Shown here piece by piece: positions 294 to 18,283 of a DNA stretch of 64,000 nucleotides. The notes beneath the pieces were generated by a model. It ran no database searches and was not told the origin of the DNA. It saw nothing but the letters and a program-made list of their open reading frames with translations. Both the position numbers and the translations under genes were made by a program. How positions within the stretch are numbered: position 1 is the first letter of the stretch; every line of letters starts with the position of its first letter. The DNA is taken from IMG/VR virus record IMGVR_UViG_3300025141_000020, positions 124,001-188,000 of that record; one strand, given 5' to 3'.

Positions 294-294
294 T

Positions 295-1113
295 ATGAAT
301 AGTATATTAGGCTTAAAGGGAAATTCAGGTTGTGAGTTAGCTATTTTAGGAGATACGATTCGAAAGTCTTGCGAACGTAACTATAACGATAGGTTAAAAT
401 TACAGTGTAAAAAACAAACTGATTTTAATAATGGTATATTTAGTACACCAAAAGTTTATGAATCTGGTATAGACAATCAAGGAAAATTCTTTTTTAATAT
501 GGAATTCATGCCGTGTAAAACGTTTGATAGGGTATTTAATACTGCAACTAAGGCTTATTTAGATACTATTATAGGAAAACTCTTGGATTTCACAATAGCG
601 AATACTAAAAAAACAACGGATTTTTCAAGTAAGATAATAACCACCAAATATGAATCAGTAAAAAATAACATAAGGGCACAGAAAAATATTGATGTTAGCT
701 ATTTAGACGATATTTTTTATTCATTAGATGAAACTATAAACATACCTGAAGGTTATTGTCATGGAGATTTAACATTTTCTAATTTATTATTCGATGGAGA
801 TAATATAGTTTTGTTAGATTTTTTAGATACCTATCTAGACTCACCAATGCAGGACATTGTAAAAATTAGACAAGATACAAAATATCATTGGTCTATAAGA
901 ATGTTAGATTGTAAGTTTGATGGAGTAAAATTGACTCAGTGCCTAAATTATATTGATAAAAAAATAGATTATGAGTTCTCAAAAAATGAGTACTATGTAG
1001 AATACTATGCAGTTTTTCAGATTCTAAATTTACTTAGAATAGTACCATACTGTAAAGAAATAAAGAATGTTAATTATTTAATAAATGAAGTAGATAAGTT
1101 ATGTCAACACTAA
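295..1113 (+). CDS. APH/choline-kinase-like phosphotransferase (sugar kinase-like)
   Basis: Brenner-type motif YCHGDLTFSNLLF and LLDF metal-binding motif. Likely start is ATG 295 right after the upstream stop; the track's 202 extension overlaps the upstream gene. Confidence 0.7.
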   Translation: MNSILGLKGNSGCELAILGDTIRKSCERNYNDRLKLQCKKQTDFNNGIFSTPKVYESGIDNQGKFFFNMEFMPCKTFDRVFNTATKAYLDTIIGKLLDFTIANTKKTTDFSSKIITTKYESVKNNIRAQKNIDVSYLDDIFYSLDETINIPEGYCHGDLTFSNLLFDGDNIVLLDFLDTYLDSPMQDIVKIRQDTKYHWSIRMLDCKFDGVKLTQCLNYIDKKIDYEFSKNEYYVEYYAVFQILNLLRIVPYCKEIKNVNYLINEVDKLCQH

Positions 1114-2159
1114 TAATACCATGTGCAGGTAGAAGCACAAGATTCCCTAACTCTAGGCCTAAATGGTCTCTTACCCATCCTTACGGAGACTTAATGTTTA
1201 TTCAGTCGATTAAGGGGTTAGATTTAAGCAAATACTCAGAAATAGTATCAGTTTTTCTAAAAGAAGACATCGAAAAGTTTAATTTATTAGATGGGCTTAA
1301 TCAGTCTCTTGGAGAAATAGACGTGAAAACATCAATAGTTTTACTTGAGGAACCAACATCTAGCCAAAGCGAAACTGTTTCAGAAGCTATAAAGGCATTA
1401 AACCTTAAGGGAGATATCCTAATAAAAGATTGTGACGCATATTTTACAGCTGAATATAGTACTGGAAATTTTGTTTATACTTCAAATCTTAGAGATGTTT
1501 CAAACATCAAAGCAAGTAGTAAGAGTTATGTTGATGTGGATAAGAATGGAATAATACAAACAGTAGTAGAAAAAGATGTAATTAGTAATGAATTTTGCTG
1601 CGGTGGATATGGATTTTCAGACGCAGAAAAGTTTGTACAGACCTATGATAAGCTAAAAGATTCTGCAGAAGGAGAAATTTATATTTCACATATAATTTTT
1701 CAACAACTACTAGATGGAGAACAGTTTATTACTTGTAGTACTTCAAACTTCAATGATTGGGGAACATTAAAGGATTGGAATGAGTATAAAAAACAATATA
1801 AAACTTTATTTTTAGACTTGGATGGTGTATTGGTGGAAAATTCGGGAGAATATATAGGAAAAAGATGGGGCACCACTGATGCTCTAGAATCAAATAAAGA
1901 CTACATAAACAATTTGTATGAAACAGGCAAGGTGAGAATAATATTCACAACTTCTAGAAAGAGTAAATTTAAAGGTGAAACTATTTCACAACTAGAAAAA
2001 TGTGGAATAAAGTATCACAACATAATATTCGATTTACTACATTGTCAGAGAATATTAGTGAATGATTTTTCTAGCAGTAATTCATTTCCAACAGCTAAGG
2101 CGGTTAATCTTCCAAGAAACAATGACAATCTAGAACAATATCTATCGGATAGTTTTTAA
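1101..2159 (+). CDS. Nucleotidyltransferase (NTP_transferase) fused to a C-terminal HAD-like phosphatase
   Basis: N-terminal LIIPCAGRSTRF and DCDAY; C-terminal FLDLDGVL HAD motif I plus FTTSR and NDF motifs. Confidence 0.75.
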   Translation: MSTLIIPCAGRSTRFPNSRPKWSLTHPYGDLMFIQSIKGLDLSKYSEIVSVFLKEDIEKFNLLDGLNQSLGEIDVKTSIVLLEEPTSSQSETVSEAIKALNLKGDILIKDCDAYFTAEYSTGNFVYTSNLRDVSNIKASSKSYVDVDKNGIIQTVVEKDVISNEFCCGGYGFSDAEKFVQTYDKLKDSAEGEIYISHIIFQQLLDGEQFITCSTSNFNDWGTLKDWNEYKKQYKTLFLDLDGVLVENSGEYIGKRWGTTDALESNKDYINNLYETGKVRIIFTTSRKSKFKGETISQLEKCGIKYHNIIFDLLHCQRILVNDFSSSNSFPTAKAVNLPRNNDNLEQYLSDSF

Positions 2160-2171
2160 AAATAATTAATT

Positions 2172-2987
2172 ATGAAAATACCAGTAATTTTAATACATAA
2201 AGGATACCAAGACTACTTGGGTTGTGCAATTAACCAAGCACTTAAAAATAACCCGGTACGATTAATCGGTGATACTTCACCACCCATAACACATGATAGT
2301 TTTAAATTTGTTAACCTAAATAACTATTGTTTAGAGTGTGACGAATTTAGGTCACATTATGAGCACTTAAATACCACACCTGTTGAGTTTGAGATTTTTT
2401 GTTACCAAAGATGGTTCATATTAAAGAATTATATGCTAAGCAATAATTTAGATAAGATATTTTATATTGACTCTGATGTATTACTTTTTGCGAATATGAC
2501 CACTGAGTGGGAAAAATTTAATCAGTATGAAATGACTTTGTTACATAGGACAGCCGCTATATCTTCATTTATTACTTTAAGGGGGGTTACAGATTTTTGT
2601 AATTTTTTAATGTCGACATATGGAGATAAAAATACTTATAATTATAAAAAAATTGCCTCACATTATCAGGTTAGAAAAGAATGTGGTTTAGCTGGTGGTG
2701 TTTGTGACATGACACTCCTAGAATTCTTTCATTATTGTTCTGAGTGTGGGGGTGGTCCTGGTAAGGTTGGTGAAATGATGCAAATAATAGATGATTCCAC
2801 TTATGACCATAATATAAATGTTCCTGACCAAGGATTTGCATTTATTAATGGTAGAAAAGACTTCAAAATAAAAGGAGGCATTCCCTATGTTTATAATGAA
2901 AGATTAGGTAAGGAGATAAAATTTAATTCTCTACATTTTCAAGGTGGAGCTAAACAATTAATGAGAAGTGTGTATGACCAATGTTAA
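2172..2987 (+). CDS. Putative GT-A fold glycosyltransferase
   Basis: IFYIDSDVLLF DxD motif; sugar-cluster context. Confidence 0.55.
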   Translation: MKIPVILIHKGYQDYLGCAINQALKNNPVRLIGDTSPPITHDSFKFVNLNNYCLECDEFRSHYEHLNTTPVEFEIFCYQRWFILKNYMLSNNLDKIFYIDSDVLLFANMTTEWEKFNQYEMTLLHRTAAISSFITLRGVTDFCNFLMSTYGDKNTYNYKKIASHYQVRKECGLAGGVCDMTLLEFFHYCSECGGGPGKVGEMMQIIDDSTYDHNINVPDQGFAFINGRKDFKIKGGIPYVYNERLGKEIKFNSLHFQGGAKQLMRSVYDQC

Positions 2988-3576
2988 CGATTCCTGGAAA
3001 AATAAGAATGTCTTTAAAAAACAATTAAATTTTAATATATCCGAATTATCTTCTAAATCCACATACCCAAACCATTGGATTGATTTCATAACATTAATAA
3101 ATCTATTCAACCCTAAGTCGATATTGGATGTAGGATGTGGATGTGGTGCTATATACGAATTATGTAAAAAAGAACTTCCCAATTTACAATATTATGGTGT
3201 AGATTATTCTGAAGACGCGATAAATTTAGCTAAAGAGCATTGGAATAAGGATGTGTTTAGTGTTTGTGACTATAAGGATTTAACCAAGTCATATATCTCT
3301 AATTTTGACCTTATTCATCTTGGGGCTGTATTAGATGTGTTGGATAATGGTGATGAAGCTTTGGAGTACCTACTTTCATTATCTCCTAAAAATATTCTAA
3401 TCGGTAGAATGAAAATAACGGATAAAGATAGTCACTACACAACCTACCAAGCTTACGATGAGATAACTACTTGTGCCTATTACCATAGTAAAAATAATTT
3501 CTTATCTTTATGTGATAAATATGGTTACAATATACGTAACATAAATGATAATTTTTATTTAAACAAAAAAATATGA
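2968..3576 (+). CDS. Class I SAM-dependent methyltransferase
   Basis: SILDVGCGCG motif I, YYGVDYS motif II, FDLIHL. Confidence 0.85.
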   Translation: MCMTNVNDSWKNKNVFKKQLNFNISELSSKSTYPNHWIDFITLINLFNPKSILDVGCGCGAIYELCKKELPNLQYYGVDYSEDAINLAKEHWNKDVFSVCDYKDLTKSYISNFDLIHLGAVLDVLDNGDEALEYLLSLSPKNILIGRMKITDKDSHYTTYQAYDEITTCAYYHSKNNFLSLCDKYGYNIRNINDNFYLNKKI

Positions 3577-4325
3577 CAGAATTTCTAGAAAAGTGGGATA
3601 GGGTAGATTTGATAAATTCTTTAGATGAATTTAATGAATTATATAAAAGTAGGCCCATAAAAGATAATGACGGTGGTATGAAATCACCCCACATGTTTTC
3701 CGCTTGGTTTATTGTAAAACAACTTAAGCCTGAATATCTAATAGAGAGTGGTGTTTGGAAGGGTTTGGGTACTTGGTTCTTTGAGAAGGCTAGTCCTGAA
3801 ACAAAGATAATTTCTATTGACCCGGCACCACATTTTAGAAAATATACAAGCCCTAATGCCACTTACCAAACAGAGGATTTTTTGGTGTCGGACTGGAGTC
3901 ATTTACCTAAAGAAGATACTTTTATTTTCTTTGATGACCATCAAAACTTTCTTGAGCGAATGAAGCATGCTTATAGTCTTGGGTTTAAAAAAATGATTAC
4001 GGAGGACAATTACCCTTACCAACAAGGAGATTGTTATACACCTAAAAAAATATTGGCTAATTGTAAGTATGTTATTGATTTAGCTGGTTCTAGAACTTGG
4101 TATGACAAAGTAGATGAGGACAATGAATATTTTAAAAATAATGTATCTGTGTATCAAGAAATGCCTCCAATATTTAAAGGTGAAGTGACTAGGTGGGGAG
4201 ATTTGTGGGGTGATGATTACCCAACACCAGAACCACTTTTAAAATTAGAAGATAGTATAAAATACTCAACTTTTTTTGGTGAAAAGGATGATTATACCTG
4301 GATTTGTTATCTTGAGTTAACATGA
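3573..4325 (+). CDS. Methyltransferase-like protein
   Basis: LIESGVWKGLGT...IISIDP and FIFFDDH resemble class I MTase motifs. Confidence 0.5.
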   Translation: MTEFLEKWDRVDLINSLDEFNELYKSRPIKDNDGGMKSPHMFSAWFIVKQLKPEYLIESGVWKGLGTWFFEKASPETKIISIDPAPHFRKYTSPNATYQTEDFLVSDWSHLPKEDTFIFFDDHQNFLERMKHAYSLGFKKMITEDNYPYQQGDCYTPKKILANCKYVIDLAGSRTWYDKVDEDNEYFKNNVSVYQEMPPIFKGEVTRWGDLWGDDYPTPEPLLKLEDSIKYSTFFGEKDDYTWICYLELT

Positions 4326-5245
4326 TAGGGTTATTTAACATAAATACCCATACCTTAGATACGTCTAGGTACACCAATTTACTTCACGATAATATCGTTA
4401 CTGAGTTTGAGGATTCCATCAAAAGTTATGTGGGGGCTAAATATGCTGTTAGCTTTAATAGTGCTACTAGCGCTATTTTTCTATCTTTATTAAATAAAAA
4501 TACAATTTTAGATGTTCCTAGTATGATACCACCAGTGGTTTTAAATGCTATAGTAACATCTGGAAATAAATATACCTTTAACGACAATACGGGTTGGGTT
4601 GGTGATTCATACGTCTTACACGATTTTGGAGATTATAAAATAGTGGACTCAGCTCAAAAATTAGAAAAAAACCAATTTAAGTCAGAGTGTAATGATGGGG
4701 ATTTAATGGTCTTTAGTTTTTACCCTACTAAACCTGTTGGTGGGTCTGATGGTGGTATTATAGTCTCCAACGATATAGATAAGATTACGTTATTAAAGGA
4801 AATGGCTCTTAATGGTATGACTTATTCACATAATAACTGGGAAAGAAAAATTAGGTTTCCTGGGTATAAAATGTATATGAACAGTATTCAAGCTGATATA
4901 GCTATGAATAATTTTAATCTGTATGAGGAAAAGTTATCGTCACTTAAAAAAATTAGAGACATATATAATAACAAGTTAGGTTATTCAAATACTAGTAACC
5001 ACCTATATAGAATAGAAGTGGATAAGAGGGAAAATTTTATAGAGTATATGAAAACAAATGGTGTGTGGTGTGGAATACATTATGAAGCTGCTCATCTTAA
5101 CTCAGTATACTCTTTGGGTAATGTTAACTGTCCATTGTCAGAGAAAAAAAGTTTAAGAACTGTTTCTATACCTTTTCATGAACGATTGACTATTTCTGAA
5201 GTTAATATTATCATTAATGCAGTAAAAGAATATCGTGAAAAATAA
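4322..5245 (+). CDS. DegT/DnrJ/EryC1/StrS PLP-dependent sugar aminotransferase
   Basis: AVSFNSATSAIFL, IVDSAQ, FSFYPTKPVGGSDGG (PLP lysine), VSIPFH. Confidence 0.85.
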   Translation: MIGLFNINTHTLDTSRYTNLLHDNIVTEFEDSIKSYVGAKYAVSFNSATSAIFLSLLNKNTILDVPSMIPPVVLNAIVTSGNKYTFNDNTGWVGDSYVLHDFGDYKIVDSAQKLEKNQFKSECNDGDLMVFSFYPTKPVGGSDGGIIVSNDIDKITLLKEMALNGMTYSHNNWERKIRFPGYKMYMNSIQADIAMNNFNLYEEKLSSLKKIRDIYNNKLGYSNTSNHLYRIEVDKRENFIEYMKTNGVWCGIHYEAAHLNSVYSLGNVNCPLSEKKSLRTVSIPFHERLTISEVNIIINAVKEYREK

Positions 5246-5633
5246 TATAAAGTGTACATTGGATGTCTTCGAGGATTATAGGGGTTGTTTATTGCCTATA
5301 GAATTTACTGGACTAGGTTTTGAACCTAAGAGAGTTTTTGTGGTCAATAGTGTTCCTGTTGGTGACATTCGTGGAAATCACTCACACCATAAAACTAAAC
5401 AGTATATAATTTGTACTAATGGGTCGGTTAATGTTATGTTAGATGACGGTAAAACTAAAAAAACAACAAAACTAAATAGAAACCAGTCTATTATGGTTCC
5501 AGAGTTAGTGTGGGATTCTCAAGAATTTTTAACGGAAGACGCTGAAATATTAGTTATATGTTCAACAGAATACAACATAGAAGATTATATACTAACCTAT
5601 GATGAATTTATTAAAGTGATTAACCAAAGATGA
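5235..5633 (+). CDS. FdtA/QdtA-like NDP-4-keto-6-deoxyhexose 3,4-ketoisomerase (cupin)
   Basis: DYRGCLLPIE, PKRVF, RGNHSHHKTKQ cupin His motif, YILTYDEF. GTG start. Confidence 0.85.
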   Translation: MKNNIKCTLDVFEDYRGCLLPIEFTGLGFEPKRVFVVNSVPVGDIRGNHSHHKTKQYIICTNGSVNVMLDDGKTKKTTKLNRNQSIMVPELVWDSQEFLTEDAEILVICSTEYNIEDYILTYDEFIKVINQR

Positions 5634-6631
5634 AGAAAACAGCTTTAATAACAGGGATAAATGGGCAAGATGGTTCATATCTAGCTGAGTTACTACTTGC
5701 TAAAGGATATGAGGTCTGGGGCATACTAAAAAGAAATTCTGTAGCAGAAAATCAAACAGCTAGAATTCCAGATGATGTCTACAAAAAGTTAAATCTAGTT
5801 TATGGTGACATGACTGACATACCATCACTAATTAATGTAATCCAAAAGTGTAAACCACAAGAAATATACAATCTAGCTGCTCAATCACATGTTAGAATAA
5901 GTTTTGACCAACCTATTTATACGGCTCAAGTAACTGGTATAGGCACATTAAATTTATTAGAGTCTGTTCGGTTAACGGACCCTAAAATCAAAATATACCA
6001 GGCTAGTAGTTCAGAAATGTTTGGCAATAATATAGATAATGATGGTTATCAAAGAGAGACAACTCCATTAAATCCTGTATCACCTTATGGATGTGCAAAA
6101 GTATTTTCATACAACATAAGTAGGAATTATAGAAATTCTTACGGGATGTTTATTTCTAACGGAATACTATTTAATCACGAATCCCCTAGAAGAGGTGCTA
6201 ATTTCGTAACTAGTAAAGTATGTAAAGAAGCGGTTAAGATTAAATTAGGTTTGTCTGATAGGTTAAGTTTGGGTAATATGGATTCTAGTAGGGATTGGGG
6301 TCATGCAAAAGATTATGTGGAGGCTATGTGGTTAATATTACAACAAGATAAACCAAATGATTTTGTTTGTTCAACTGGTATATCACATACTGTTAAAGAT
6401 TTAGTAATATATGTTTTTGGTGAACTTGAACTGGATTGGGAAAAATATGTTGTTCAAGATAAAAAATACTTAAGGCCAGAAGAATTAACTCACTTAAAGG
6501 GTGATTGTAGTAAAATAACTTCAGAATTAGGGTGGAAACATAAATACACATTTGAGTCTATGTTAGATGAAATGATTGGCTATTGGTTAGATAAATTAAA
6601 AAATAATAAAAACGATGAATATAGAAAATAA
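5630..6631 (+). CDS. gmd: GDP-mannose 4,6-dehydratase
   Basis: ALITGINGQDGSYLAE, YNLAAQSHV, YQASSSEMFG, SPYGCAK, LFNHESPRRG, RDWGHAKDYV. Confidence 0.97.
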   Translation: MKKTALITGINGQDGSYLAELLLAKGYEVWGILKRNSVAENQTARIPDDVYKKLNLVYGDMTDIPSLINVIQKCKPQEIYNLAAQSHVRISFDQPIYTAQVTGIGTLNLLESVRLTDPKIKIYQASSSEMFGNNIDNDGYQRETTPLNPVSPYGCAKVFSYNISRNYRNSYGMFISNGILFNHESPRRGANFVTSKVCKEAVKIKLGLSDRLSLGNMDSSRDWGHAKDYVEAMWLILQQDKPNDFVCSTGISHTVKDLVIYVFGELELDWEKYVVQDKKYLRPEELTHLKGDCSKITSELGWKHKYTFESMLDEMIGYWLDKLKNNKNDEYRK

Positions 6632-7199
6632 TAAATTATGGTGTGAAGAAGGTCATATGAATATAGACCAGGCAAATTTTATACAAAAATTATCAAAAGA
6701 ACAAAAGCCAAAATATTGTTTAGAGACTGGTTTTTGTACTGGTAGAAGTTCATTATCTGTAATACTAGGTAATGAAGATAATATTGAAAAATTTATAACA
6801 ATTGATATTAACTTTGATTATTGGCCTCCTTCTAGAAAATCTCTTGGTGAATTTGAATCTAAATATAGTTTTTATCGTGGAATTGAAAATAATTCTGCTG
6901 AAGTTTTAACTAAAGAATTTTTTGAATCAGAGTACCCTAATGGAATTGATTGGTTTACTGTGGATGGGGACCATTCATATGCTGGTTGTAAAAATGACTT
7001 ATGGACGGCTCTCCCCCACATGAATAAAAATTCAATCATGATTATTGATGATTATGAATCAAACACCCCAAATGGTTGTCCAATACCAGAAGTCACCAAT
7101 GCGTGTGATGATTTTTATAAAGAAAATTCAGATAAACTAAGTAGAGAAAAATGGAATAAGTTAGGTAAAGGGTTTTGTGTATTTAGAGTTAAACAATGA
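6615..7199 (+). CDS. SAM-dependent methyltransferase (Methyltransf_24-like)
   Basis: CLETGFCTGRSS and VDGDHSYAGCKND...IIDDY motifs. Confidence 0.75.
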   Translation: MNIENNKLWCEEGHMNIDQANFIQKLSKEQKPKYCLETGFCTGRSSLSVILGNEDNIEKFITIDINFDYWPPSRKSLGEFESKYSFYRGIENNSAEVLTKEFFESEYPNGIDWFTVDGDHSYAGCKNDLWTALPHMNKNSIMIIDDYESNTPNGCPIPEVTNACDDFYKENSDKLSREKWNKLGKGFCVFRVKQ

Positions 7200-7876
7200 A
7201 AGGTAAAAAAGTTTTAGTTTTGGGAAATAAACCCTATAGTAATTTCAAACTCAATAATATTATTGATAGCTTTGATATAATTTACAGATGTAACCTTGCT
7301 TGGCCTGGTAAGAACAATGGAACAAAATTTGGTAAATTAGCAATGTGTAATCATATATATGAAAATTTCGTAAAAAAATCTGTTAGTAAAGAACAATCCA
7401 TCAAGCCATATGAAAATGATTATGATAATGCATATTTAAGTGATTGGTATGATTGGTTTCAAGTAAATAAAGAAAATTTTGATGAGGTATTTCATCAAAA
7501 TGAACAGACTGGTAATCAATGGAATGAAATGCTTAAAAACTATGGCTGTCCACATAAATTTACAAGAACACCAAGAACAGGATATTCAACTATTTTTAGA
7601 AATTTAATAAACAATAATAGTGAAATATATGTTTCATCTTTTAGTTTGGATGATGATGAAATTAGAGAATCAATTGGGCTAAAAATTGATAAAGCAAAAT
7701 CAGAAGGTAGCGGTTGTCATTCAAAGTCAGACGAAACAAATATATTAACTTGGTTGCATAACAATGAAAAAATTGACGCGTCACTGTGTATGCTTGAAGA
7801 CACTGAAGAAATTAGTATCAAAAGTAATAATATGAAGTTTTCTAAGTTTATACTTGATTTAGTAAAAAAGAAATAA
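7196..7876 (+). CDS. GT29 (sialyltransferase)-like protein
   Basis: KKVLVLGNKP...IIDSFDIIYRCN resembles sialylmotif L; PRTGYS and a late CHS resemble motifs S/VS; lies directly upstream of a CMP-transferase. Confidence 0.5.
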   Translation: MKGKKVLVLGNKPYSNFKLNNIIDSFDIIYRCNLAWPGKNNGTKFGKLAMCNHIYENFVKKSVSKEQSIKPYENDYDNAYLSDWYDWFQVNKENFDEVFHQNEQTGNQWNEMLKNYGCPHKFTRTPRTGYSTIFRNLINNNSEIYVSSFSLDDDEIRESIGLKIDKAKSEGSGCHSKSDETNILTWLHNNEKIDASLCMLEDTEEISIKSNNMKFSKFILDLVKKK

Positions 7877-7878
7877 TT

Positions 7879-9486
7879 ATGAAAAAGCCTTTAATTTTAG
7901 ATTGCACAATCCGTGATGGTGGAATAGTAAATGATTTTAATTTTGACATTAACTTTGTTAAGAAATGTATGGATACAATAGAAAAAAGTGATTGTAATTA
8001 TTGTGAATTAGGATATATACATGATAAAAAATATATCAATTCATATGACACGTTTTGGAAAAATATAAATATTGTGGAGTTATCATCAATGCTTAAAAAA
8101 TCTAATATTAAATTATCTGTAATGGGTGATATGGGAAAATTTAGTTTAGATTTAATTCCAGAAAAAACATCTAATATTGTTGTAGACTTAATTAGAGTAG
8201 CTGGAACAGAAGATAAATTACTAGGTATGTTGGATTTAACTAAAAAAATATCGTCGAAGGGTTACGAAACATCAATCAACTTAATGGCATCTTCACATTA
8301 TTCTAAAGATGATTGGGAACGCATAGTAGATATTGTTAATAAATCTAGCTTCAAGCCCACATTTATTTATTTTGCAGATAGTTTTGGTAACTTAAAGCCT
8401 AGTGATGTTTTAAGTATAGTTAATAAACTTAAAAAATTAAACGATGTCAAAATTGGCTTTCATAGCCACAACCAACTACAATTAGCTTTTGCTAATACAT
8501 TAAAAGCAATCGAGCTGGATATAGATATAGTAGATTCAACAATAACAGGAATGGGAAAAGGCCCAGGAAATTTACCCACTGAATTATTATTAGGATATTA
8601 TAATCATGATTTGAAATATGTTAATAAATTTATTGACAATGAAATGAAATCACTAATGAATAAATATGAATGGGGTTATTTACATAAATATTTTATTTGT
8701 GGTTTATATAATGCAACACCTAGATATGGTGAATTCATTATGCGAGATAAAAATTCATCCTTGAATGATGTTGTTGATAGTGTTAAAAATAAATCTTTAG
8801 GTGATAAAATTAGTTATAAAAAAGATATTTCTAATGTAAGAATAACAGCTGTTATACCAATAAAAATGAACAATGAAAGATTACCAGGTAAAAACACAAA
8901 TAATTTAGGAGATAAGCCTCTGTGTCAATATATATTTAATACTTTATTAAAAGTTAAAGAGCGTTATAAAAATTTAGACATTATAGTTTATTGTAGTAGT
9001 GATGAGATAAAACAATATTTATTACCTGGTATCAAATTCCTAAAACGAGATAAAAGACTAGATGAAAATAATACAAACTATACAGATATATTTTCTGAAT
9101 TTATTAAAGAAGCTGATAGTGATATATACATTTATACGCATGCAACTAGCCCTTTTATAAAAGCAGATAGTATTATAAATTCAATTAAAAAGGTCTTAAT
9201 AGAAGGTTATGATAGTTCTTTTTCAGTTTTGAAAAAAAATGTTTTTTATTGGGCTGATGACAAGTCAAATTATAACACAAATAATGTACCTCGAACCCAA
9301 GATTTGGACCCTATATTTATAGAGACCAGTGGTTTTTATGTATATAGAAAAGACGTTTTTGAAAATACGGGTACAAGAATAGGAAAAACTCCTTTCCTTT
9401 ATTGTGTTGATGAAGAAGAAGGTATCGATATAGATGATAAAAAAGATTTTGTACTAGCTCAAAATATAATTTGTAGTGTTAAATAG
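7879..9486 (+). CDS. Fusion of a DRE-TIM (HMGL/HOA-like) aldolase and an acylneuraminate-type cytidylyltransferase
   Basis: N-half LDCTIRDGG, FADSFG, GFHSHNQL, GMGKGPGN; C-half AVIPIKMNNERLPGKN, HATSPF, PRTQDL, ETSGFY, DIDDKKDF. Confidence 0.85.
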   Translation: MKKPLILDCTIRDGGIVNDFNFDINFVKKCMDTIEKSDCNYCELGYIHDKKYINSYDTFWKNINIVELSSMLKKSNIKLSVMGDMGKFSLDLIPEKTSNIVVDLIRVAGTEDKLLGMLDLTKKISSKGYETSINLMASSHYSKDDWERIVDIVNKSSFKPTFIYFADSFGNLKPSDVLSIVNKLKKLNDVKIGFHSHNQLQLAFANTLKAIELDIDIVDSTITGMGKGPGNLPTELLLGYYNHDLKYVNKFIDNEMKSLMNKYEWGYLHKYFICGLYNATPRYGEFIMRDKNSSLNDVVDSVKNKSLGDKISYKKDISNVRITAVIPIKMNNERLPGKNTNNLGDKPLCQYIFNTLLKVKERYKNLDIIVYCSSDEIKQYLLPGIKFLKRDKRLDENNTNYTDIFSEFIKEADSDIYIYTHATSPFIKADSIINSIKKVLIEGYDSSFSVLKKNVFYWADDKSNYNTNNVPRTQDLDPIFIETSGFYVYRKDVFENTGTRIGKTPFLYCVDEEEGIDIDDKKDFVLAQNIICSVK

Positions 9487-9509
9487 AGATTAAAAGTAAT
9501 AATAAACTA

Positions 9510-10256
9510 ATGGGAAGAAGAAGTAAGAAATTATCTAGAGAAGAACAACGAGAGGTTGAGGAATGGATTTACCAGAATAATACTGAAGAAACTAGAATGA
9601 CTGACACTATGACTATTCGTGTTAAGTGTAAAACAGAAAATCAGAAGTCTCTAGTTAACGCGATTAAAGAAAAAGAAGTAATTATATGTTCTGGGCCTGC
9701 TGGAACAGGTAAAACTTATCTAGCGTGTGCTGAAGCTTTAAAATTAATTAAAAAATATGCAAAATATAAAAAGATTGTAATTGTAAAGTCAGTCACTACT
9801 TTAAAGAATGAAGAGATTGGTTTTTTAAAAGGTAATTTACGTGAAAAAATGGAGCCTTTTATGTTTTCTTTTGTTCATAACTTTGAAAAATTGGTTGGTC
9901 AGTCTATAACTTCTAAATTAAGAGAATTAAAAACTATAGAAGAAATGCCTATTGCGTACATGAGAGGAATCAATTTAGATAGGTCAATTATAATAATAGA
10001 TGAGGCACAAAACATTTCACAAGAGAATATAAGGACTATTATGACTAGGTTAGGGAGAGACTCTAAAATGATATTTCTTGGTGATGAAAGACAGCAAGAT
10101 TCTAAGGGTGGTAACGGATTAACATTTTTAATGGACCACTTTCAAGACATAGAAGAAATAGGGTGTGTACAATTCACTAAATCGGACGTGGTTAGAAATC
10201 CATTAGTAGCTAAAATAGAGAGGGTATTTGATTCTTTACAAAAGAACATTAAATAA
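9510..10256 (+). CDS. phoH: PhoH-family ATPase
   Basis: GPAGTGKT Walker A, EEIGFLKG, YMRGINL, IIDEAQN, GDERQQD, VVRNPLV. Confidence 0.95.
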   Translation: MGRRSKKLSREEQREVEEWIYQNNTEETRMTDTMTIRVKCKTENQKSLVNAIKEKEVIICSGPAGTGKTYLACAEALKLIKKYAKYKKIVIVKSVTTLKNEEIGFLKGNLREKMEPFMFSFVHNFEKLVGQSITSKLRELKTIEEMPIAYMRGINLDRSIIIIDEAQNISQENIRTIMTRLGRDSKMIFLGDERQQDSKGGNGLTFLMDHFQDIEEIGCVQFTKSDVVRNPLVAKIERVFDSLQKNIK

Positions 10257-10268
10257 TTAAGTTTAAAT

Positions 10269-10847
10269 ATGGTAATTAGTGTAAGTATAAATGGTGTGTT
10301 AAGAGATGTTCTATCTAGATTTGAGGATGTGTATAACAAATACTTTGAGGATGGTGTAAAATCTGAAGTGGTAACCTCTGATTTACTTAAGTACACCCAT
10401 TTTGAAACACCTGAAGAGTTATTTGAGTTTATGTATGAAGAATCTCCTATGGAGATATTTGGACAGGCTAAGGAGACCCATATCAACGTAATGACACACC
10501 TAACAGATTTATATAAAGAAATGCCTAAAGGATATAAATTGCGTGTTGTTGGCGATGATTTAGGTAGAGCTAAATCATCAACCTTGTGGTTTTTAGCTAA
10601 ATATGGTTGTTCGTGTGATGAAATATCATTTTACAACACTTCTACTATAAATGAAATATGGGAAAAAACAGATTTATTTATAACATCTGATTTAGATATT
10701 ATAAAATCTAAACCCGAAGATAAAACATTAATAATCGTAGATAAAGTTTACAATTCCGATTTGGTTTGTAATTTACGTATAAACACAATTAAAGACATTG
10801 AGTCGTTTGAAAACATACATGAAAAACTTGAGTGCGTTAAATCTTAG
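10269..10847 (+). CDS. HAD-like (5'(3')-deoxyribonucleotidase-type) protein with degenerate motif I
   Basis: VISVSINGVLRD aligns with the xIxIDxDGVL motif I, but both Asp are replaced; WFLAKYG segment. Confidence 0.5.
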   Translation: MVISVSINGVLRDVLSRFEDVYNKYFEDGVKSEVVTSDLLKYTHFETPEELFEFMYEESPMEIFGQAKETHINVMTHLTDLYKEMPKGYKLRVVGDDLGRAKSSTLWFLAKYGCSCDEISFYNTSTINEIWEKTDLFITSDLDIIKSKPEDKTLIIVDKVYNSDLVCNLRINTIKDIESFENIHEKLECVKS

Positions 10848-11133
10848 AATAGGTAATGAAGTATTATATTATGATGTTGATGAGTTTATGAACCAAGTAA
10901 CATATAAACCTATTACAACTGATGAAAAAACTGTTGTCGTTGATTCGGATATTAAAAATACCGACATAATGTTACCTAAGTTTGAGTTTTTTAAACTTAT
11001 GATTGATACGACATGTAATGTAATAGAAGATGTTGACCCTACTTTAGGTTCTTTATCTTTAGAAAAAATGTCGGTGTCTTATAAATTAGCCCTAAATACC
11101 TTAATAAAGTATAAAATAATTAAAAAAAAATAA
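10819..11133 (+). CDS. Hypothetical protein
   Basis: Open frame packed between neighbours; start uncertain (ATG 10819 chosen over TTG 10798). Confidence 0.55.
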   Translation: MKNLSALNLRIGNEVLYYDVDEFMNQVTYKPITTDEKTVVVDSDIKNTDIMLPKFEFFKLMIDTTCNVIEDVDPTLGSLSLEKMSVSYKLALNTLIKYKIIKKK

Positions 11134-11139
11134 TAAATA

Positions 11140-12198
11140 ATGGAACAATTAGAACAATTAGAAAATGCCTTGTCTAAACTAAAAAACAAAGAGTCAAAAC
11201 TTTATTTTTTAACCCAGGACACCGTTGGTAATGCTGCTGCGTCAGTAAACACCAATTACCAATACGTAAAACATCTTAACGAGGCGGGGTATAAAGCGTA
11301 TATACTACACGAAAAAACTGAGTATAAAGGTGTTAGTTCTTGGTTAGATGAAGAGTACTCGAATCTACCTCACGCTAATATTGAAGGTGGTGAGTTAAAG
11401 GTGGGTCCACAGGATTTTGTGATAATCCCTGAGCTGTTTGGTCATGTTTTAGAACAGTTAAAAGATATGCCTTGCACTAAAATTATGTTATCACAATGTT
11501 ATGATTACATATTAGAAACTCTACAGCCCGGTTTTGGTTGGCCTAATTATAATGTACATAAATGTTTAACTACAACAGAAGAACAAGCTGCCCACATAAA
11601 AAAATTCTTTCCTTCAGTAGAAACTACGGTTATAACACCAACAATTCCAGAATATTTTAAAGATTCAGAAAAACCTAAAAAACCTATAATCGGTGTTCAT
11701 ACTAGAGACCAAAGAGAAACTATGAAACTTATAAAAGGTTTTTATCTACAGAACCCACAATTTAAATGGGTCACATTTAAAGACCTTAGAGGTTTATCTA
11801 GAAAAGATTTTGCTAAGAGTTTAGGTGAGTGTTGTGCTTCTGTGTGGGTTGACAGAATTAGTAGTTACGGTACTTTTCCTTTGGAATCTATGAAGTGTAA
11901 AACTCCGGTGATTGGGGTGTTACCTATAATGAAACCTTCATGGTTAACAAATGAGAATGGTGTTTGGGCTTTTGATGAATCTAAACTTATCGAGGTCTTG
12001 GGTAATTATATGAAGAACTGGTTGGAGGATTCTTTACCTGATTCTTTATATGAAAAGATGGCGGAGACCGTGAAAGCCTTGCCTAAAGACTCTGAACGCG
12101 AGGGCATTATTTCTTATTTTGATAAGTTAGTGTCTGATAAAATATCGGAAATGGATATTTCTATAAATAAACTTAAACCTGTAGAGGAAACTATTTAA
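11140..12198 (+). CDS. GT-B fold (GT4-like) glycosyltransferase
   Basis: DFVIIPELFG and SSYGTFPLESMKCKTPVIG, matching the E-x-F-G-x-x-x-x-E-A-M-x-x-G-x-P-V-I family motif. Confidence 0.65.
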   Translation: MEQLEQLENALSKLKNKESKLYFLTQDTVGNAAASVNTNYQYVKHLNEAGYKAYILHEKTEYKGVSSWLDEEYSNLPHANIEGGELKVGPQDFVIIPELFGHVLEQLKDMPCTKIMLSQCYDYILETLQPGFGWPNYNVHKCLTTTEEQAAHIKKFFPSVETTVITPTIPEYFKDSEKPKKPIIGVHTRDQRETMKLIKGFYLQNPQFKWVTFKDLRGLSRKDFAKSLGECCASVWVDRISSYGTFPLESMKCKTPVIGVLPIMKPSWLTNENGVWAFDESKLIEVLGNYMKNWLEDSLPDSLYEKMAETVKALPKDSEREGIISYFDKLVSDKISEMDISINKLKPVEETI

Positions 12199-12202
12199 TA
12201 TT

Positions 12203-13000
12203 ATGAAAAATGAAAATGTTAGTGTAATTTTACCGGTACACGATGTATCTGGTGATTTTGATGTGTGGTTTAAAAAAGCCATAAGAAGTGTTGAACAATC
12301 AGTGGTTAAGCCTAGTAAGTTACTGATTATCTGTGCTGATAATAAAGAGATTAAACAATACATGGATTCTTGGGAAAAACCTACCGATTTAGGGTTATCC
12401 ATACTATATAATGATGATAAGACTGATTATTGTGGTCAAGTAAACTATGGTGTTGATAAATGTGAGACAGAGTATTTTTCTATTTTAGAGTTTGATGATG
12501 AGTATTCCAATATCTGGTTTAAGAATTTTGATGAGTACTTAAAACATTATCCCGATGTGGATATGTTCTTGCCTTTGGTTGTTGATACTGATGAGCAAGG
12601 TCAGTTTCTAGGTTTCACAAATGAAGCTTTATGGGCTATGGGATTCTCAGAGGAACAAGGTTACTTAGATAATAATACCTTATTAAAATTTCAGAATTTC
12701 CAAGTAAGTGGTTTTATCATGAAAAAAGAAAAGTTTGAGGAAATAGGTGGGATGAAACCTTCTATTAAATTAACCTTTAATTATGAGTTTTTATTAAGAG
12801 CAACCTATAATGATACTACCATTATGACCATACCTAAAGTAGGGTATAAACATACTAACCAAAGAACTAACTCTTTATTCTGGGATTATAAGTATTCAAA
12901 TGAAATCTTGTTAAGTCCTGATGAAGCTAAGTTTTGGGTTGATACAGCAAAAAAAGAATATTTCTTTACCACTGACAGGGAAGTATCTTTTAATTCATAA
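12203..13000 (+). CDS. GT2-family glycosyltransferase
   Basis: VSVILPVH start, NYGVDKCETEYFSILEFDDEY, YEFLLRA. Confidence 0.75.
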   Translation: MKNENVSVILPVHDVSGDFDVWFKKAIRSVEQSVVKPSKLLIICADNKEIKQYMDSWEKPTDLGLSILYNDDKTDYCGQVNYGVDKCETEYFSILEFDDEYSNIWFKNFDEYLKHYPDVDMFLPLVVDTDEQGQFLGFTNEALWAMGFSEEQGYLDNNTLLKFQNFQVSGFIMKKEKFEEIGGMKPSIKLTFNYEFLLRATYNDTTIMTIPKVGYKHTNQRTNSLFWDYKYSNEILLSPDEAKFWVDTAKKEYFFTTDREVSFNS

Positions 13001-13006
13001 ATTAAA

Positions 13007-13708
13007 ATGGGTAGGAAACCTTTAACTAAGCAGTATTTTGGTCCACCTCAAGAAGAAGCGGTAAGAATATTTCTTACTGCGAGTACCTGGGATGAAAAAA
13101 ACTTAGTATATAATGACTACCTTAGGGACCCATTAATTAAGATGATTGAAAGTATAATAAGAAGGTATAAGCTATATAGACCAAATATGGATTTTACTGA
13201 TATACACACTGACACCCTATCTTTTCTAGTTACTAAAATGGAAAAGTTTAAACCCGCTAAAGGAAAAAAAGCTTATTCGTATTTTGGTACTATCTGTAAG
13301 AATTATCTAATGGGTCAAATAATGAAAGACAATAGGGATAGAAATAGAAAAATTTCTTATGAAGATATATCCTATAGCTTAGAACAAAACGAAAAGTATT
13401 CCTACACTATTCTTGATAATGATATTGAGGCTGAGACTGTGATGTCTTCTTTAGTGGAAGAACTTAAACAATTTACTGTTGATAATAGGTTAAATGTTAA
13501 TGAAGAAAAAATCGGGTATTGTTTAATCGACGTTTTTGAAAACTACGAATCCATATTTATTGCCGGGAAAGGAAACAAGTTTAACAAGAATATAATACTT
13601 TACCAATTAAGAGAGATGAGTGGATTAACTACAAAAGAAATTCGTTCCGCTCTTAAACCATTTAAATCCTTATACAAAGAGCTTGTAGAGAAATTGGTAA
13701 ATAGATAA
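13007..13708 (+). CDS. Phage late sigma factor, T4 gp55-like
   Basis: Sigma region-2-like KFKPAKGKKAYSYFGTICKNYL, comparable to gp55 AFAYFTQI; directly upstream of the structural genes. Confidence 0.65.
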   Translation: MGRKPLTKQYFGPPQEEAVRIFLTASTWDEKNLVYNDYLRDPLIKMIESIIRRYKLYRPNMDFTDIHTDTLSFLVTKMEKFKPAKGKKAYSYFGTICKNYLMGQIMKDNRDRNRKISYEDISYSLEQNEKYSYTILDNDIEAETVMSSLVEELKQFTVDNRLNVNEEKIGYCLIDVFENYESIFIAGKGNKFNKNIILYQLREMSGLTTKEIRSALKPFKSLYKELVEKLVNR

Positions 13709-16265: not shown

Positions 16266-16277
16266 AAAAAATAAATT

Positions 16278-16460: not shown

Positions 16461-16462
16461 CT

Positions 16463-18259: not shown

Positions 18260-18283
18260 ATATTTATATATAAACATAATTTA

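What the first reader, a model, noticed from the sequence alone, without database searches (positions are those of the whole stretch)
7196..9486. Phage ulosonic-acid module: fused aldolase-cytidylyltransferase next to a sialyltransferase-like gene
A DRE-TIM metallo-aldolase (HOA/HMGL-like) is fused to a CMP-NeuAc/KDO-type cytidylyltransferase, directly after a GT29-like protein. DRE-TIM aldolases condense pyruvate with an aldehyde, and CMP-transferases activate 2-keto-3-deoxy acids for GT29-type transfer (established). Together they form a self-contained route to make, activate and transfer a probably non-canonical ulosonic acid without a NeuB synthase. The product and the acceptor (virion, host surface or DNA) are unknown.
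Basis: partly seen in the sequence, partly recalled or inferred. Interest (0 to 1): 0.65.

Follow-up and report, generated by a model that had tools for sequence, protein, structure and literature searches.

The report
Phage sugar-acid make-activate-transfer gene pair
An uncultured marine T4-like phage carries a sialyltransferase-fold gene directly followed by one gene fusing a pyruvate aldolase to a CMP-sugar-acid synthetase. The same enzymes sit together in many bacteria and an archaeal contig, which points to an undescribed, NeuB-independent way of making and attaching a sialic-acid-like sugar.

Summary

The 210-kb phage record has no NeuB, KdsA or PEP mutase. The aldolase belongs to the uncharacterised BVU_2661 (PDB 3dxi) family. 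That family is repeatedly fused or adjacent to CMP-transferases in both domain orders, to KdsC/Kdn-9-P-type phosphatases, and to Maf-like transferases. In 22 of 80 bacterial loci a CMP-transferase flanks the aldolase, and NeuB lies nearby in only 3-4.

The most likely mechanism is: pyruvate (or oxaloacetate) plus an aldose, possibly phosphorylated, gives a 3-deoxy-2-ulosonic acid. This is CMP-activated and then transferred by the GT29-like enzyme. The product, the aldose and the acceptor are unknown, and no biochemistry exists.

The pair sits in a larger glycan island, and the GT29-like gene is that island's conserved anchor. I rate it a new variant of a known kind, interest about 0.65.

The parts
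7196..7876 (+). GT29-like (sialyltransferase-fold) glycosyltransferase. It is 226 aa and the ORF opens directly on the first strand of the fold, with no membrane anchor or stem. Family-invariant residues are G10 N11 (motif L-like), the PRTG segment at aa 119-122 (motif S-like), and H175-x4-E180 (motif VS-like).
7879..9486 (+). Bifunctional aldolase / CMP-ulosonate synthetase fusion (535 aa). Its start codon lies 2 nt after the stop of the GT29-like gene.
7894..8793 (+). Aldolase domain plus helical linker (aa 6-305), a DRE-TIM metallolyase of the BVU_2661/3dxi family. Invariant residues are D8, R12, D13 (DCTIRDGG), E43 and H195-x-H197.
   Evidence: 3dxi E 2.9e-32, aa 6-305; 3dxi Foldseek E 3.5e-18, TMt 0.74; DmpG 1nvm E 1.6e-14
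8827..9468 (+). CMP-transferase domain (aa 317-530), CTP_transf_3 of the NeuA/PseF/Kdn type. It has an N-terminal IPIK..RLPGKN loop and a C-terminal DIDxxxDF motif.
   Evidence: 9t4z PpNeuA E 2.9e-12; 1qwj E 1.4e-9; KdsB 1gq9 only 5.6e-3; 9t4z CMP-Kdn synthetase TMt 0.77; PseF E 1.9e-10
6615..7199 (+). Methyltransf_24 SAM methyltransferase that overlaps the start of the GT29-like gene by 4 nt. The same neighbour is found in four related phage loci, and the family also occurs in the archaeal cassette. It is a candidate sugar tailoring enzyme.
1101..2159 (+). Two-domain protein. The N-terminus is nucleotidyltransferase-like (LIIPCAGRSTRF; weak IspD/NTP_transferase hits). The C-terminus is HAD-phosphatase-like (LFLDLDGVL; phrog_1238/415, weak HAD Pfam hits). 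It is a candidate phosphatase and/or NDP-sugar step. All hits are below family thresholds.
10269..10847 (+). NT5C-like HAD-superfamily protein (E 1.1e-4, just under the cut-off). It is a second candidate phosphatase, two genes downstream of the fusion.
4322..6631 (+). NDP-6-deoxy-aminosugar branch of the island: DegT-type aminotransferase (4322-5245), FdtA/WxcM-like 3,4-ketoisomerase (5235-5633) and GDP-mannose 4,6-dehydratase (5630-6631; 397.9 bits against the gmd cut-off of 415). It probably makes a second, GDP-linked sugar for the same glycan.
12203..13000 (+). GT2 glycosyltransferase in the same island. A further weak GT8-like ORF lies at 2172-2987.

Best explanation
The two genes form a three-activity module that makes, activates and transfers a 3-deoxy-2-ulosonic (sialic-acid-like or Kdo-like) sugar without a PEP-dependent NeuB/KdsA synthase.

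Step 1 (inferred): the N-terminal metal-dependent DRE-TIM aldolase forms the pyruvate enolate, either from pyruvate or by decarboxylating oxaloacetate. It adds this to the aldehyde of an aldose, possibly an aldose phosphate. The product is a 4-hydroxy-2-oxo acid, which is a 3-deoxy-2-ulosonic acid.

Step 1b (inferred, optional): a HAD phosphatase removes a terminal phosphate. Relatives have a KdsC/Kdn-9-P-type or small HAD phosphatase fused or adjacent. This phage has only weak HAD candidates, at 1101-2159 and 10269-10847.

Step 2 (inferred from family membership): the C-terminal NeuA/PseF/Kdn-type domain uses CTP to make the CMP-ulosonate. Fusing it to the aldolase would pull the reversible aldol reaction forward and channel the product.

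Step 3 (inferred from fold and motifs): the soluble 226-aa GT29-like enzyme transfers the sugar acid from CMP to an unknown cytoplasmic-face acceptor. This is probably the end of a phage-specified glycan, whose other sugars come from the rest of the island (GDP-6-deoxy-aminosugar genes, methyltransferases, GT2).

What is shown: the domain identities, conserved catalytic motifs, the fold, the gene linkage and its recurrence, and the absence of NeuB and KdsA. What is not shown: any enzymatic activity, the identity of the aldose, or the acceptor.
For: Domain and motif evidence:
- Domains were assigned.
- The metal and substrate motifs DCTIRDGG, E43 and HxH are invariant across 11 fusion relatives.
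- The closest characterised relatives of the aldolase are pyruvate aldolases (HOA aldolase NF006049 E 4.9e-22; DmpG 1nvm). Claisen synthases score lower (homocitrate synthase E 3.1e-13).
- The CMP domain is nearest to CMP-Kdn, CMP-Neu5Ac and CMP-Pse synthetases and has the DID motif.

GT29-like protein:
- H175-x4-E180, GN and PRTG are conserved (G10, N11, H175 and E180 invariant) in 29 sequences.
- Relatives hit Pfam GT29 over both the motif-L region (profile positions 59-90) and the S-to-VS region (196-271).

Rosetta-stone evidence:
- P0008 is a KdsC/Kdn-9-P phosphatase (NF058599 E 2.5e-37; TIGR01670 113.4 bits, above its 106.95 cut-off) fused to the aldolase and the CMP-transferase.
- P0014, P0017 and P0079 have the reversed domain order.
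- Hundreds of proteins fuse the aldolase to a Maf-like domain.

Gene-context evidence:
- Archaeal contig: Maf-like, fusion, HAD.
- 22 of 80 bacterial loci have CTP_transf_3 beside the aldolase, and 4 of these also have a kdsC-like gene.
- NeuB lies within about 8 kb in only 3-4 of 80 loci.
- NeuB genes in the genome of Anaeromicropila herbilytica lie more than 0.9 Mb from the cassette.
- The phage record has no NeuB, KdsA, KdsC or PEP mutase.
- Stops and starts overlap or abut from 3573 to 9486, which suggests co-expression.
Against: - There is no biochemical evidence for any member of this aldolase family. No NCBIfam equivalog exists and I found no paper.
- The catalytic His of DmpG/BphI (RDGxH) is Ile here and Tyr in most of the family. 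The chemistry may therefore differ from HOA aldolases.
- The phage has no clear phosphatase and no identified source of a free aldose.
- The 226-aa protein itself scores nothing against Pfam GT29.
- Four of the 8 related phage records searched carry the GT29-like gene with no CTP_transf_3 match. The transferase therefore does not strictly depend on a phage-made donor.
- About 50 of the 80 bacterial aldolase loci, mostly Bacillaceae and Paenibacillus, are standalone genes without any such partner. The family is not uniformly tied to glycosylation.
- The record is estimated to be only 66% complete, so the absence of NeuB is not proof.
Confidence: 0.6

Rival explanations
1. Salvage or tailoring model. 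The CMP-transferase activates a host-made sugar acid such as Kdo or a host nonulosonic acid. The aldolase domain is not the backbone synthase. It would instead cleave or recycle sugar acids, or make a small 2-oxo acid used as a substituent. The GT29-like enzyme would then transfer the host-type sugar.
For: Four of the 8 related phage records searched have the GT29-like gene but no CMP-transferase match, so host CMP-sugars may suffice. In most relatives the neighbouring cassette is cupin, then optionally CTP_transf_3, then radical SAM/SPASM, then a class-III aminotransferase. That set looks like tailoring of an existing sugar acid rather than synthesis. Aldol reactions with pyruvate are reversible (established chemistry).
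Against: The aldolase is fused to the CMP-transferase in both domain orders, and also to a KdsC/Kdn-9-P-type phosphatase. That is the order of a biosynthetic pathway, not of catabolism. NeuB is usually absent near the bacterial cassettes. Seven of the 20 bacterial genomes searched that carry the cassette show no NeuB match at all, although those genomes may be incomplete.
Confidence: 0.15
2. The 226-aa protein is not a glycosyltransferase. It would be a kinase or pyrophosphokinase with the related MptE / thiamin-pyrophosphokinase fold, or another nucleotide-binding enzyme acting on the sugar acid or a cofactor.
Confidence: 0.07
3. The DRE-TIM domain acts as a Claisen-type synthase, like citramalate, homocitrate or isopropylmalate synthases. 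Alternatively it makes a short non-sugar 4-hydroxy-2-oxo acid, so that the CMP adduct is not a glycosyl donor of the ulosonic-acid type.
For: Homocitrate, isopropylmalate and citramalate synthase models and structures match the barrel at E 1e-13 to 1e-8. The DmpG-type catalytic His is missing.
Against: HOA-aldolase models and DmpG score better than any Claisen synthase. The partners are a KdsC/Kdn-9-P-type phosphatase, NeuA-type CMP-transferases and sialyltransferase-fold transferases. All of these act on ring-forming ulosonic acids according to established knowledge of those families.
Confidence: 0.06
4. Phosphonate pathway. A RhiG- or FrbC-like HMGL enzyme would work with a phosphonate cytidylyltransferase.
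For: HMGL-like enzymes (FrbC, RhiG) and cytidylyltransferases both occur in phosphonate clusters (PMC8942020).
Against: The 210-kb record has no PEP mutase. Phosphonate cytidylyltransferases belong to PF12804 or PF01467, not to CTP_transf_3. No decarboxylase was seen among the island's scanned ORFs.
Confidence: 0.02

Closest known systems
Canonical Kdn / Neu5Ac / Kdo pathways (NeuB or Kdn-9-P synthase or KdsA; KdsC-type phosphatase; NeuA/KdsB CMP-synthetase; sialyl- or Kdo-transferase)
   Same: The logic and the last two or three steps are the same. There is a CTP_transf_3 CMP-synthetase nearest to CMP-Kdn, CMP-Neu5Ac and CMP-Pse synthetases. A KdsC/Kdn-9-P-type phosphatase is fused in a relative. 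The transferase has the sialyltransferase fold.
   Different: The C-C bond-forming enzyme differs. No NeuB (PF03102) or KdsA (PF00793) is present. A DRE-TIM class II aldolase takes its place, and it is expected to use pyruvate or oxaloacetate rather than PEP.
BVU_2661 'putative aldolase' N-terminal domain, Bacteroides vulgatus (PDB 3dxi, structural genomics)
   Same: It is the closest solved relative of aa 6-305: phmmer E 2.9e-32, Foldseek E 3.5e-18, TMt 0.74, 27% identity. It belongs to the same uncharacterised family.
   Different: 3dxi is the N-terminal part of a longer bacterial protein of unknown function. No activity is known for it, and here the C-terminal partner is a CMP-transferase.
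4-hydroxy-2-oxovalerate aldolases DmpG/BphI (PDB 1nvm, 4lrs, 4jn6)
   Same: They share the DRE-TIM barrel, the Asp plus HxH metal site, the following helical domain and the pyruvate-enolate chemistry.
   Different: The phage protein scores far below the equivalog cut-off (68.9 bits against 286). The catalytic His of RDGxH is replaced by Ile. No DmpF-type dehydrogenase partner is present. The context is glycan synthesis, not aromatic degradation.
CAZy GT29 eukaryotic and viral sialyltransferases (ST6GalNAc2, ST8SiaIII, ST3Gal1, ST6Gal1)
   Different: The phage protein is only 226 aa, with no membrane anchor or stem. I did not locate the disulfide-forming Cys pair of motifs L and S at the corresponding positions, nor a recognisable motif III. 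The protein itself does not reach the Pfam threshold. The donor is probably not Neu5Ac.
Maf (PF01973) flagellin nonulosonic-acid glycosyltransferases (e.g. PDB 5mu5)
   Different: The phage uses a GT29-like protein instead. It is structurally closer to GT29 than to Maf.
Laboratory one-pot three-enzyme sialylation (sialic acid aldolase NanA + CMP-sialic acid synthetase + sialyltransferase). This comparison is from my own knowledge, not from a tool result.
   Same: The three activities and the same thermodynamic trick are used. A reversible pyruvate aldolase is pulled forward by CTP-driven activation and then transfer.
   Different: NanA is a class I (Schiff-base) aldolase that is unrelated in sequence. 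Here the aldolase is a class II metalloenzyme, naturally fused to the synthetase.

Membership tests
DRE-TIM metallolyase superfamily / Pfam HMGL-like (PF00682) | Profile match above the Pfam gathering score | tested here: met
   65.5 bits against a cut-off of 29, aa 5-237. The same result came from the genome search, at 67.5 bits.
DRE-TIM metallolyase superfamily / Pfam HMGL-like (PF00682) | Asp-Arg-Glu signature and HxH metal ligands | tested here: met
   D8/R12/D13 in DCTIRDGG, E43 and H195-x-H197 are invariant in alignment A2.
4-hydroxy-2-oxovalerate aldolase (DmpG/BphI, TIGR03217) | Score above the equivalog cut-off | tested here: not met
   68.9 bits against 286.
4-hydroxy-2-oxovalerate aldolase (DmpG/BphI, TIGR03217) | Catalytic His following RDG (RDGxH), and a DmpF-type acylating dehydrogenase partner | tested here: not met
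   The sequence reads RDGGI, and RDGGY in most of the family. The genome record has no PF09290 match. That the His is catalytic is from my own knowledge of BphI/DmpG.
BVU_2661-type aldolase family (PDB 3dxi) | Full-length homology of the barrel plus the helical domain | tested here: met
   phmmer E 2.9e-32 over aa 6-305. Foldseek E 3.5e-18, TMt 0.74.
CMP-ulosonate synthetases / Pfam CTP_transf_3 (PF02348) | Profile match above the gathering score | tested here: met
   54.5 bits against 22.6, aa 324-491.
CMP-ulosonate synthetases / Pfam CTP_transf_3 (PF02348) | N-terminal basic P-loop-like motif and C-terminal DID metal motif of NeuA-type enzymes | tested here: met
   IPIK..RLPGKN at aa 326-339 and DIDxxxDF at aa 517-524. 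K329, R334, K338, D517 and D519 are nearly invariant. The assignment of these motifs is from my own knowledge.
Specific equivalogs PseF (TIGR03584) / KdsB (PRK13368, PRK05450) | Score above the equivalog cut-off, which would name the substrate | tested here: not met
   PseF 40.8 bits against 205.7; KdsB 28.6 against 255. The substrate cannot be named.
CAZy GT29 sialyltransferases (PF00777) | GT-A variant sialyltransferase fold | tested here: met
CAZy GT29 sialyltransferases (PF00777) | Sialylmotifs L, S and VS (HxxxxE) | tested here: met
   LVLGNKP...D...R.N; PRTGYS...F(S/T); H175-x4-E180. G10, N11, R31, N33, H175 and E180 are invariant. Relatives match Pfam profile positions 59-90 and 196-271. 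The mapping to named motifs was done by eye, not by residue-level superposition.
CAZy GT29 sialyltransferases (PF00777) | Sialylmotif III and the L-S disulfide | tested here: inconclusive
   No clear (H/Y)Y(Y/F/W/H)(E/D/Q/G) motif was found. The invariant Cys residues are C51 and C198, and I could not place them at the canonical motif L/S positions. I made no residue-level structural alignment.
CAZy GT29 sialyltransferases (PF00777) | Profile match above the Pfam gathering score for this protein | tested here: not met
   The protein itself has no hit, even at E <= 1. One relative (P0212) passes at 24.8 bits against 23.
CAZy GT29 sialyltransferases (PF00777) | Type II membrane topology with a stem region | tested here: not met
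   The 226-aa ORF begins directly with strand 1 of the fold, so it is a soluble minimal core.
CAZy GT29 sialyltransferases (PF00777) | Use of a CMP-linked sialic or ulosonic acid donor | not testable with these tools
   Only genomic linkage to CTP_transf_3 genes is available.
NeuB/KdsA PEP-dependent ulosonate synthase pathways | Presence of a NeuB (PF03102) or KdsA (PF00793) synthase | tested here: not met
   None in the 210,568-bp record. No NeuB in 8 related phage records. The record is estimated to be 66% complete.
Phosphonate biosynthesis (RhiG/FrbC type) | PEP mutase in the genome or neighbourhood | tested here: not met
   No PF13714 match.

The most novel reading that the evidence does not exclude
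The BVU_2661-type DRE-TIM aldolases would be the backbone synthases of a widespread, so far unrecognised ulosonic-acid pathway. It would depend on pyruvate or oxaloacetate and be independent of NeuB and KdsA. Its steps would be aldolase, then a KdsC-type phosphatase, then a CMP-synthetase, then a Maf- or GT29-fold transferase. It would occur in gut and rumen Firmicutes and Bacteroidales, Omnitrophota, deltaproteobacterial lineages, an archaeal N-glycosylation locus, and marine T4-like phages. The phage would have condensed it into two genes to cap a virion or host-envelope glycan with a new acidic sugar.
Probability: 0.45. Interest if true: 0.8.

Novelty: new variant of a known kind. Interest (0 to 1): 0.65.

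Why it matters
To my knowledge, every characterised route to sialic acids, other nonulosonic acids and Kdo builds the carbon backbone with a PEP-dependent NeuB- or KdsA-type synthase. Genome surveys for these sugars therefore rely on those markers. If this aldolase family does the same job from pyruvate, two things follow. First, surveys based on NeuB and KdsA miss a whole set of organisms that make acidic cap sugars, including common gut and rumen bacteria. Second, a structural-genomics orphan (3dxi) and hundreds of 'aldolase catalytic domain-containing' proteins gain a function.

For phage biology, it would show that an uncultured marine T4-like lineage encodes a complete donor-plus-transferase system for a sialic-acid-like sugar. 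The system sits inside a swappable glycan island, which bears on virion glycosylation, host-surface remodelling and receptor masking. The natural aldolase-synthetase fusion could also serve as a compact biocatalyst for making CMP-activated sugar acids.

The hypothesis is directly testable with two recombinant proteins. Cultured bacteria carrying the cassette, such as Anaeromicropila herbilytica TB5 and a Sporosarcina isolate, are also available for testing.

Tried and rejected
- DNA (megablast) and protein (tblastn) searches of 50,697 deposited phage genomes. The region has no DNA match. The GT29-like protein has no protein match. The fusion has only two partial aldolase hits. No cultured relative is available for comparison.
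- A profile of the GT29-like family against PDB sequences gave only chance hits with E > 0.1. The relationship to GT29 appears only through Pfam hits of relatives and through the fold.
- PHROGs gave nothing for either protein.
- The weak NCBIfam hit of the 226-aa protein to the GntF N-methyltransferase (E 1.6e-3, aa 70-120) is rejected as chance. Neither the fold nor the motifs support it.
- The phosphonate reading is rejected because there is no PEP mutase and the cytidylyltransferase family is the wrong one.
- A DmpG/DmpF-type catabolic aldolase is rejected because there is no dehydrogenase partner, the score is below the cut-off, and the catalytic His is absent.
- I considered whether the GDP-6-deoxy-aminosugar genes supply the aldose, as in legionaminic acid synthesis, and think it unlikely. 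No NDP-sugar hydrolase or 2-epimerase turned up among the island ORFs scanned (I did not search for one by family). The FdtA-type isomerase implies a 3-amino sugar. Its amino group would occupy the position needed for pyranose ring closure of the ulosonate. This is inference only.
- Nine literature searches found no description of this aldolase family or of a phage GT29 module. The library is open-access only, so this is not proof that nothing has been published.
- The fold search 'atlas' library was unavailable.
- I did not use the large representative-protein search or complex prediction. Neither a claim of absence of relatives nor a claim of binding depends on them.
- BLASTP of ORF 1101-2159 against HAD proteins from related loci gave only a motif-level match.


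Full report
**What the window is.** The window is part of a 210,568-bp IMG/VR virus record that is estimated to be 66% complete; the window covers 124001-188000 of that record. It encodes a T4-type major capsid protein, a portal and a large terminase. GC content is about 31%. The closest cultured relatives share only 37-44% capsid identity: Flavobacterium phage immuto and Microcystis phage Mel-JY01. The finding's DNA occurs in marine and seawater metagenomes from about 20 studies.

**Check of the observation.** ORFs 7196-7876 (226 aa) and 7879-9486 (535 aa) exist as described. They sit in a run of + strand genes whose stops and starts overlap or abut from 3573 to 9486. The 535-aa protein carries HMGL-like (aa 5-237, 65.5 bits) and CTP_transf_3 (aa 324-491, 54.5 bits). 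Both scores are well above the Pfam cut-offs. A contig from an independent sample (run X2, 1931 bp) is identical over 7502-9432. It therefore bridges both the gene junction and the domain junction. Six metagenomic clusters at 55-78% identity have the same architecture. The fusion and the adjacency are real.

**The 226-aa protein.**
- It has no Pfam or PHROG hit of its own.
- It has 116 homologue clusters, nearly all unnamed and several from Tara or other marine assemblies, and none in deposited phage genomes.
- In an alignment of 29 members the invariant residues include G10 and N11 in LVLGNKP, R31 and N33, H175-x4-E180, and W186-L187-H188. A conserved PRTG segment is also present. By eye these correspond to sialylmotifs L, S and VS of GT29.
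- Eight of the 29 members hit PF00777. P0212 passes the gathering score over profile positions 196-271, and P0226 matches positions 59-90.
- The AlphaFold model (pLDDT 89.4) matches only sialyltransferases at the top of the Foldseek list.
- Among predicted viral structures its neighbours include proteins annotated GT29 from a choanoflagellate mimivirus and from uncultured Caudovirales, and herpesvirus and poxvirus sialyltransferases.
- I conclude it is a minimal, soluble protein with a GT29-type sialyltransferase fold. It fails some formal GT29 criteria: its own Pfam score, membrane topology, and motif III and the L-S disulfide (not located). I therefore call it GT29-like rather than a GT29 member.

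**The fusion protein.**
- Residues 6-305 are homologous to PDB 3dxi, the N-terminal domain of the uncharacterised 'putative aldolase' BVU_2661 of Bacteroides vulgatus (E 2.9e-32; Foldseek E 3.5e-18, TMt 0.74).
- The next best matches are the pyruvate aldolases DmpG/BphI. Claisen-type synthases come after them.
- The DRE-TIM hallmarks DCTIRDGG, E43 and H195-x-H197 are invariant among fusion relatives.
- The His that follows RDG in DmpG is Ile here and Tyr in most of the family. The protein is also far below the HOA-aldolase equivalog cut-off, and no DmpF partner exists.
- Residues 317-530 match CMP-Kdn synthetase of Prymnesium parvum (9t4z, E 2.9e-12; described in PMC12934254) and murine CMP-Neu5Ac synthetase. 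The NCBIfam PseF model also matches (E 1.9e-10). The KdsB match is much weaker.
- The NeuA-type DID motif is conserved.
- The whole-protein model is confident (pLDDT 89.6).

**Comparative evidence for a biosynthetic link.**
- (a) Fusions occur in both orders. Aldolase-then-synthetase is seen in this phage clade, P0019 and P0020. Synthetase-then-aldolase is seen in P0014, P0017 and P0079.
- (b) P0008 (42% identical, Tara) adds an N-terminal phosphatase. It passes the KdsC subfamily cut-off, and its best match is the Kdn-9-P phosphatase model (E 2.5e-37).
- (c) On a contig that also encodes an AglB/STT3 oligosaccharyltransferase, which suggests an archaeon, the order is Maf-like protein, fusion, HAD. 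A Methyltransf_24 gene lies upstream.
- (d) Hundreds of bacterial proteins fuse the aldolase to a Maf-like (PF01973) domain.
- (e) A scan of one genome per prokaryotic species found at least 600 family members. Among the best 80 loci, my own HMMs found a CTP_transf_3 gene directly beside the aldolase in 22. Four of these also have a kdsC-like gene. Examples are Paludibacteraceae (kdsC-like, synthetase, aldolase+Maf) and Bacteroidales (kdsC-like, synthetase, aldolase, Maf). In the complete genome of Anaeromicropila herbilytica the synthetase and aldolase genes overlap.
- (f) NeuB homologues lie within the roughly 8-kb flanks in only 3-4 of the 80 loci. In A. herbilytica they are more than 0.9 Mb away.
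- (g) The phage record has no NeuB, KdsA, KdsC or PEP mutase, and eight related phage records have no NeuB.
- About 50 of the 80 loci, mostly Bacillaceae and Paenibacillus, hold a standalone aldolase of about 320 aa in unrelated contexts. The glycan link therefore applies to a sub-branch and not to the whole family.

**The surroundings.** The pair lies in a glycan island that spans roughly 200-13,000:
- an APH-like kinase (202-1113);
- a protein with weak nucleotidyltransferase and HAD signatures (1101-2159);
- a weak GT8-like ORF (2172-2987);
- methyltransferases (2968-3576, 6615-7199);
- a DegT aminotransferase, an FdtA-type isomerase and a near-equivalog GDP-mannose 4,6-dehydratase (4322-6631);
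- PhoH (9510-10256);
- an NT5C-like HAD (10269-10847);
- a GT2 (12203-13000).

In related phage contigs the GT29-like gene is the constant element, often with the Methyltransf_24 gene beside it, while the cassette downstream varies. One form is the aldolase-synthetase fusion (this phage and L001, where a small HAD-like ORF sits in between). More often it is cupin, then optionally CTP_transf_3, then radical SAM/SPASM, then a class-III aminotransferase. Four of the eight related records searched have no CTP_transf_3 match.

**Mechanism.** The aldolase condenses a pyruvate enolate with an aldose, possibly an aldose phosphate, to give a 3-deoxy-2-ulosonic acid. The fused synthetase makes the CMP-sugar. 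The GT29-like enzyme then transfers it. Fusion would help because pyruvate aldol additions are reversible, and CTP-driven activation would pull the equilibrium forward. Use of oxaloacetate with decarboxylation, as I recall for RhiG-type HMGL enzymes, would be another source of driving force. All catalytic steps are inferred, and nothing here identifies the aldose, the ring size or the acceptor. Because the transferase is soluble, the acceptor should be accessible from the cytoplasm. Candidates are virion proteins before assembly, or a lipid-linked or LPS-core intermediate. DNA seems unlikely for this fold, but I did not test that.

**Rival explanations.** I considered four: host-sugar salvage or tailoring, a non-transferase role for the 226-aa protein, Claisen-type chemistry, and a phosphonate pathway. 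They are weighed in the dedicated fields. None is excluded by experiment, and the phosphonate reading is nearly excluded by the absence of PEP mutase.

**Novelty.** No curated NCBIfam model names this aldolase family. Its only structure is an unannotated structural-genomics entry. Nine full-text searches found no paper describing it or a phage GT29 module. The fusion architecture itself already exists, unstudied, in public bacterial and metagenomic data. The overall logic (synthase, CMP-synthetase, sialyltransferase-fold enzyme) is the known one. I therefore rate it a new variant of a known kind. The new element is the replacement of the PEP-dependent synthase by a DRE-TIM aldolase and its compaction into a two-gene phage module.

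**Limits and compliance.** The genome is incomplete. Motif-to-motif mapping onto GT29 was done by eye and was not confirmed by residue-level superposition. My cassette census used HMMs built from few sequences, so it undercounts partners. No alternative genetic code was used. 

Noticed in passing
window 47559-47967 (+): The phage encodes a full-length tmRNA. ARAGORN predicts the tag peptide AKLATLGLVREGSTVAIA, and Rfam RF00023 scores 123.3 bits against a gathering score of 47, E 1e-47, over model positions 1-374 of 374. No tRNA genes were found in the window.
   Followed up: partly
L003 10697-15300; L014 10698-13085; L016 10690-12639; L017 10690-13047; L019 7563-9518; L020 4736-7762: In most related phage contigs the GT29-like gene is followed by a different cassette. 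Where I scanned the ORFs (L003, L014, L017, L020) it reads: a 115-aa cupin, sometimes CTP_transf_3, a radical SAM/SPASM enzyme, a class-III aminotransferase, and in L003 also an OYE flavoenzyme. L016 and L019 share the ORF layout, with a CTP_transf_3 gene after the small ORF. This looks like an alternative, also undescribed, route to a modified CMP-sugar acid. It shows that the donor cassette is swappable around a fixed transferase.
   Followed up: partly
L024, L032, L041, L050 (also L025-L038, L049, L056, L060, L085, L103): Gut and rumen Bacteroidales and Firmicutes, and other bacteria, carry tight cassettes reading kdsC-like phosphatase, CTP_transf_3, aldolase (often with a Maf-like C-terminal domain), usually with no NeuB nearby. 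Cultured carriers include Anaeromicropila herbilytica TB5 and Sporosarcina sp. SAFN-015.
   Followed up: partly
window 1101-2159 (+): A 352-aa protein appears to fuse a nucleotidyltransferase-like N-terminus (LIIPCAGRSTRF) to a HAD-phosphatase-like C-terminus (LFLDLDGVL). All family hits are below threshold. It lies next to an APH-like kinase (202-1113). Together they could form a kinase / phosphatase / nucleotidyltransferase set for an NDP-sugar.
   Followed up: partly
L022 21-1304 (giant-virus MAG record, IMG/VR GVMAG): A 427-aa ORF in a giant-virus metagenome bin joins a homologue of the GT29-like protein (35% identity) to a PhyH-type dioxygenase domain (aa 221-418, E 1.4e-7).
   Followed up: no
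window 23401-25197 (-): The major capsid protein is unusually long at 598 aa. The best-scoring Gp23 stretch covers only aa 345-583 (a second stretch was not examined), so the N-terminal part of roughly 340 residues is largely unassigned.
   Followed up: no
window 9510-10256 (+): A PhoH-like ATPase (E 9.4e-60) sits in the middle of the glycan island, between the fusion and further glycosyltransferase-like genes.
   Followed up: no
window 13007-13708 (+) and 14109-20308 (+): A weak sigma-70 region 2 / phage late-sigma-like ORF (E 6e-3 and 8e-4) follows the island. After it come three large ORFs (718, 598 and 674 aa) with no family hit. The third is rich in Thr, Ser and Asn (12%, 9% and 9%). These could be structural proteins and possible glycan acceptors.
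   Followed up: no
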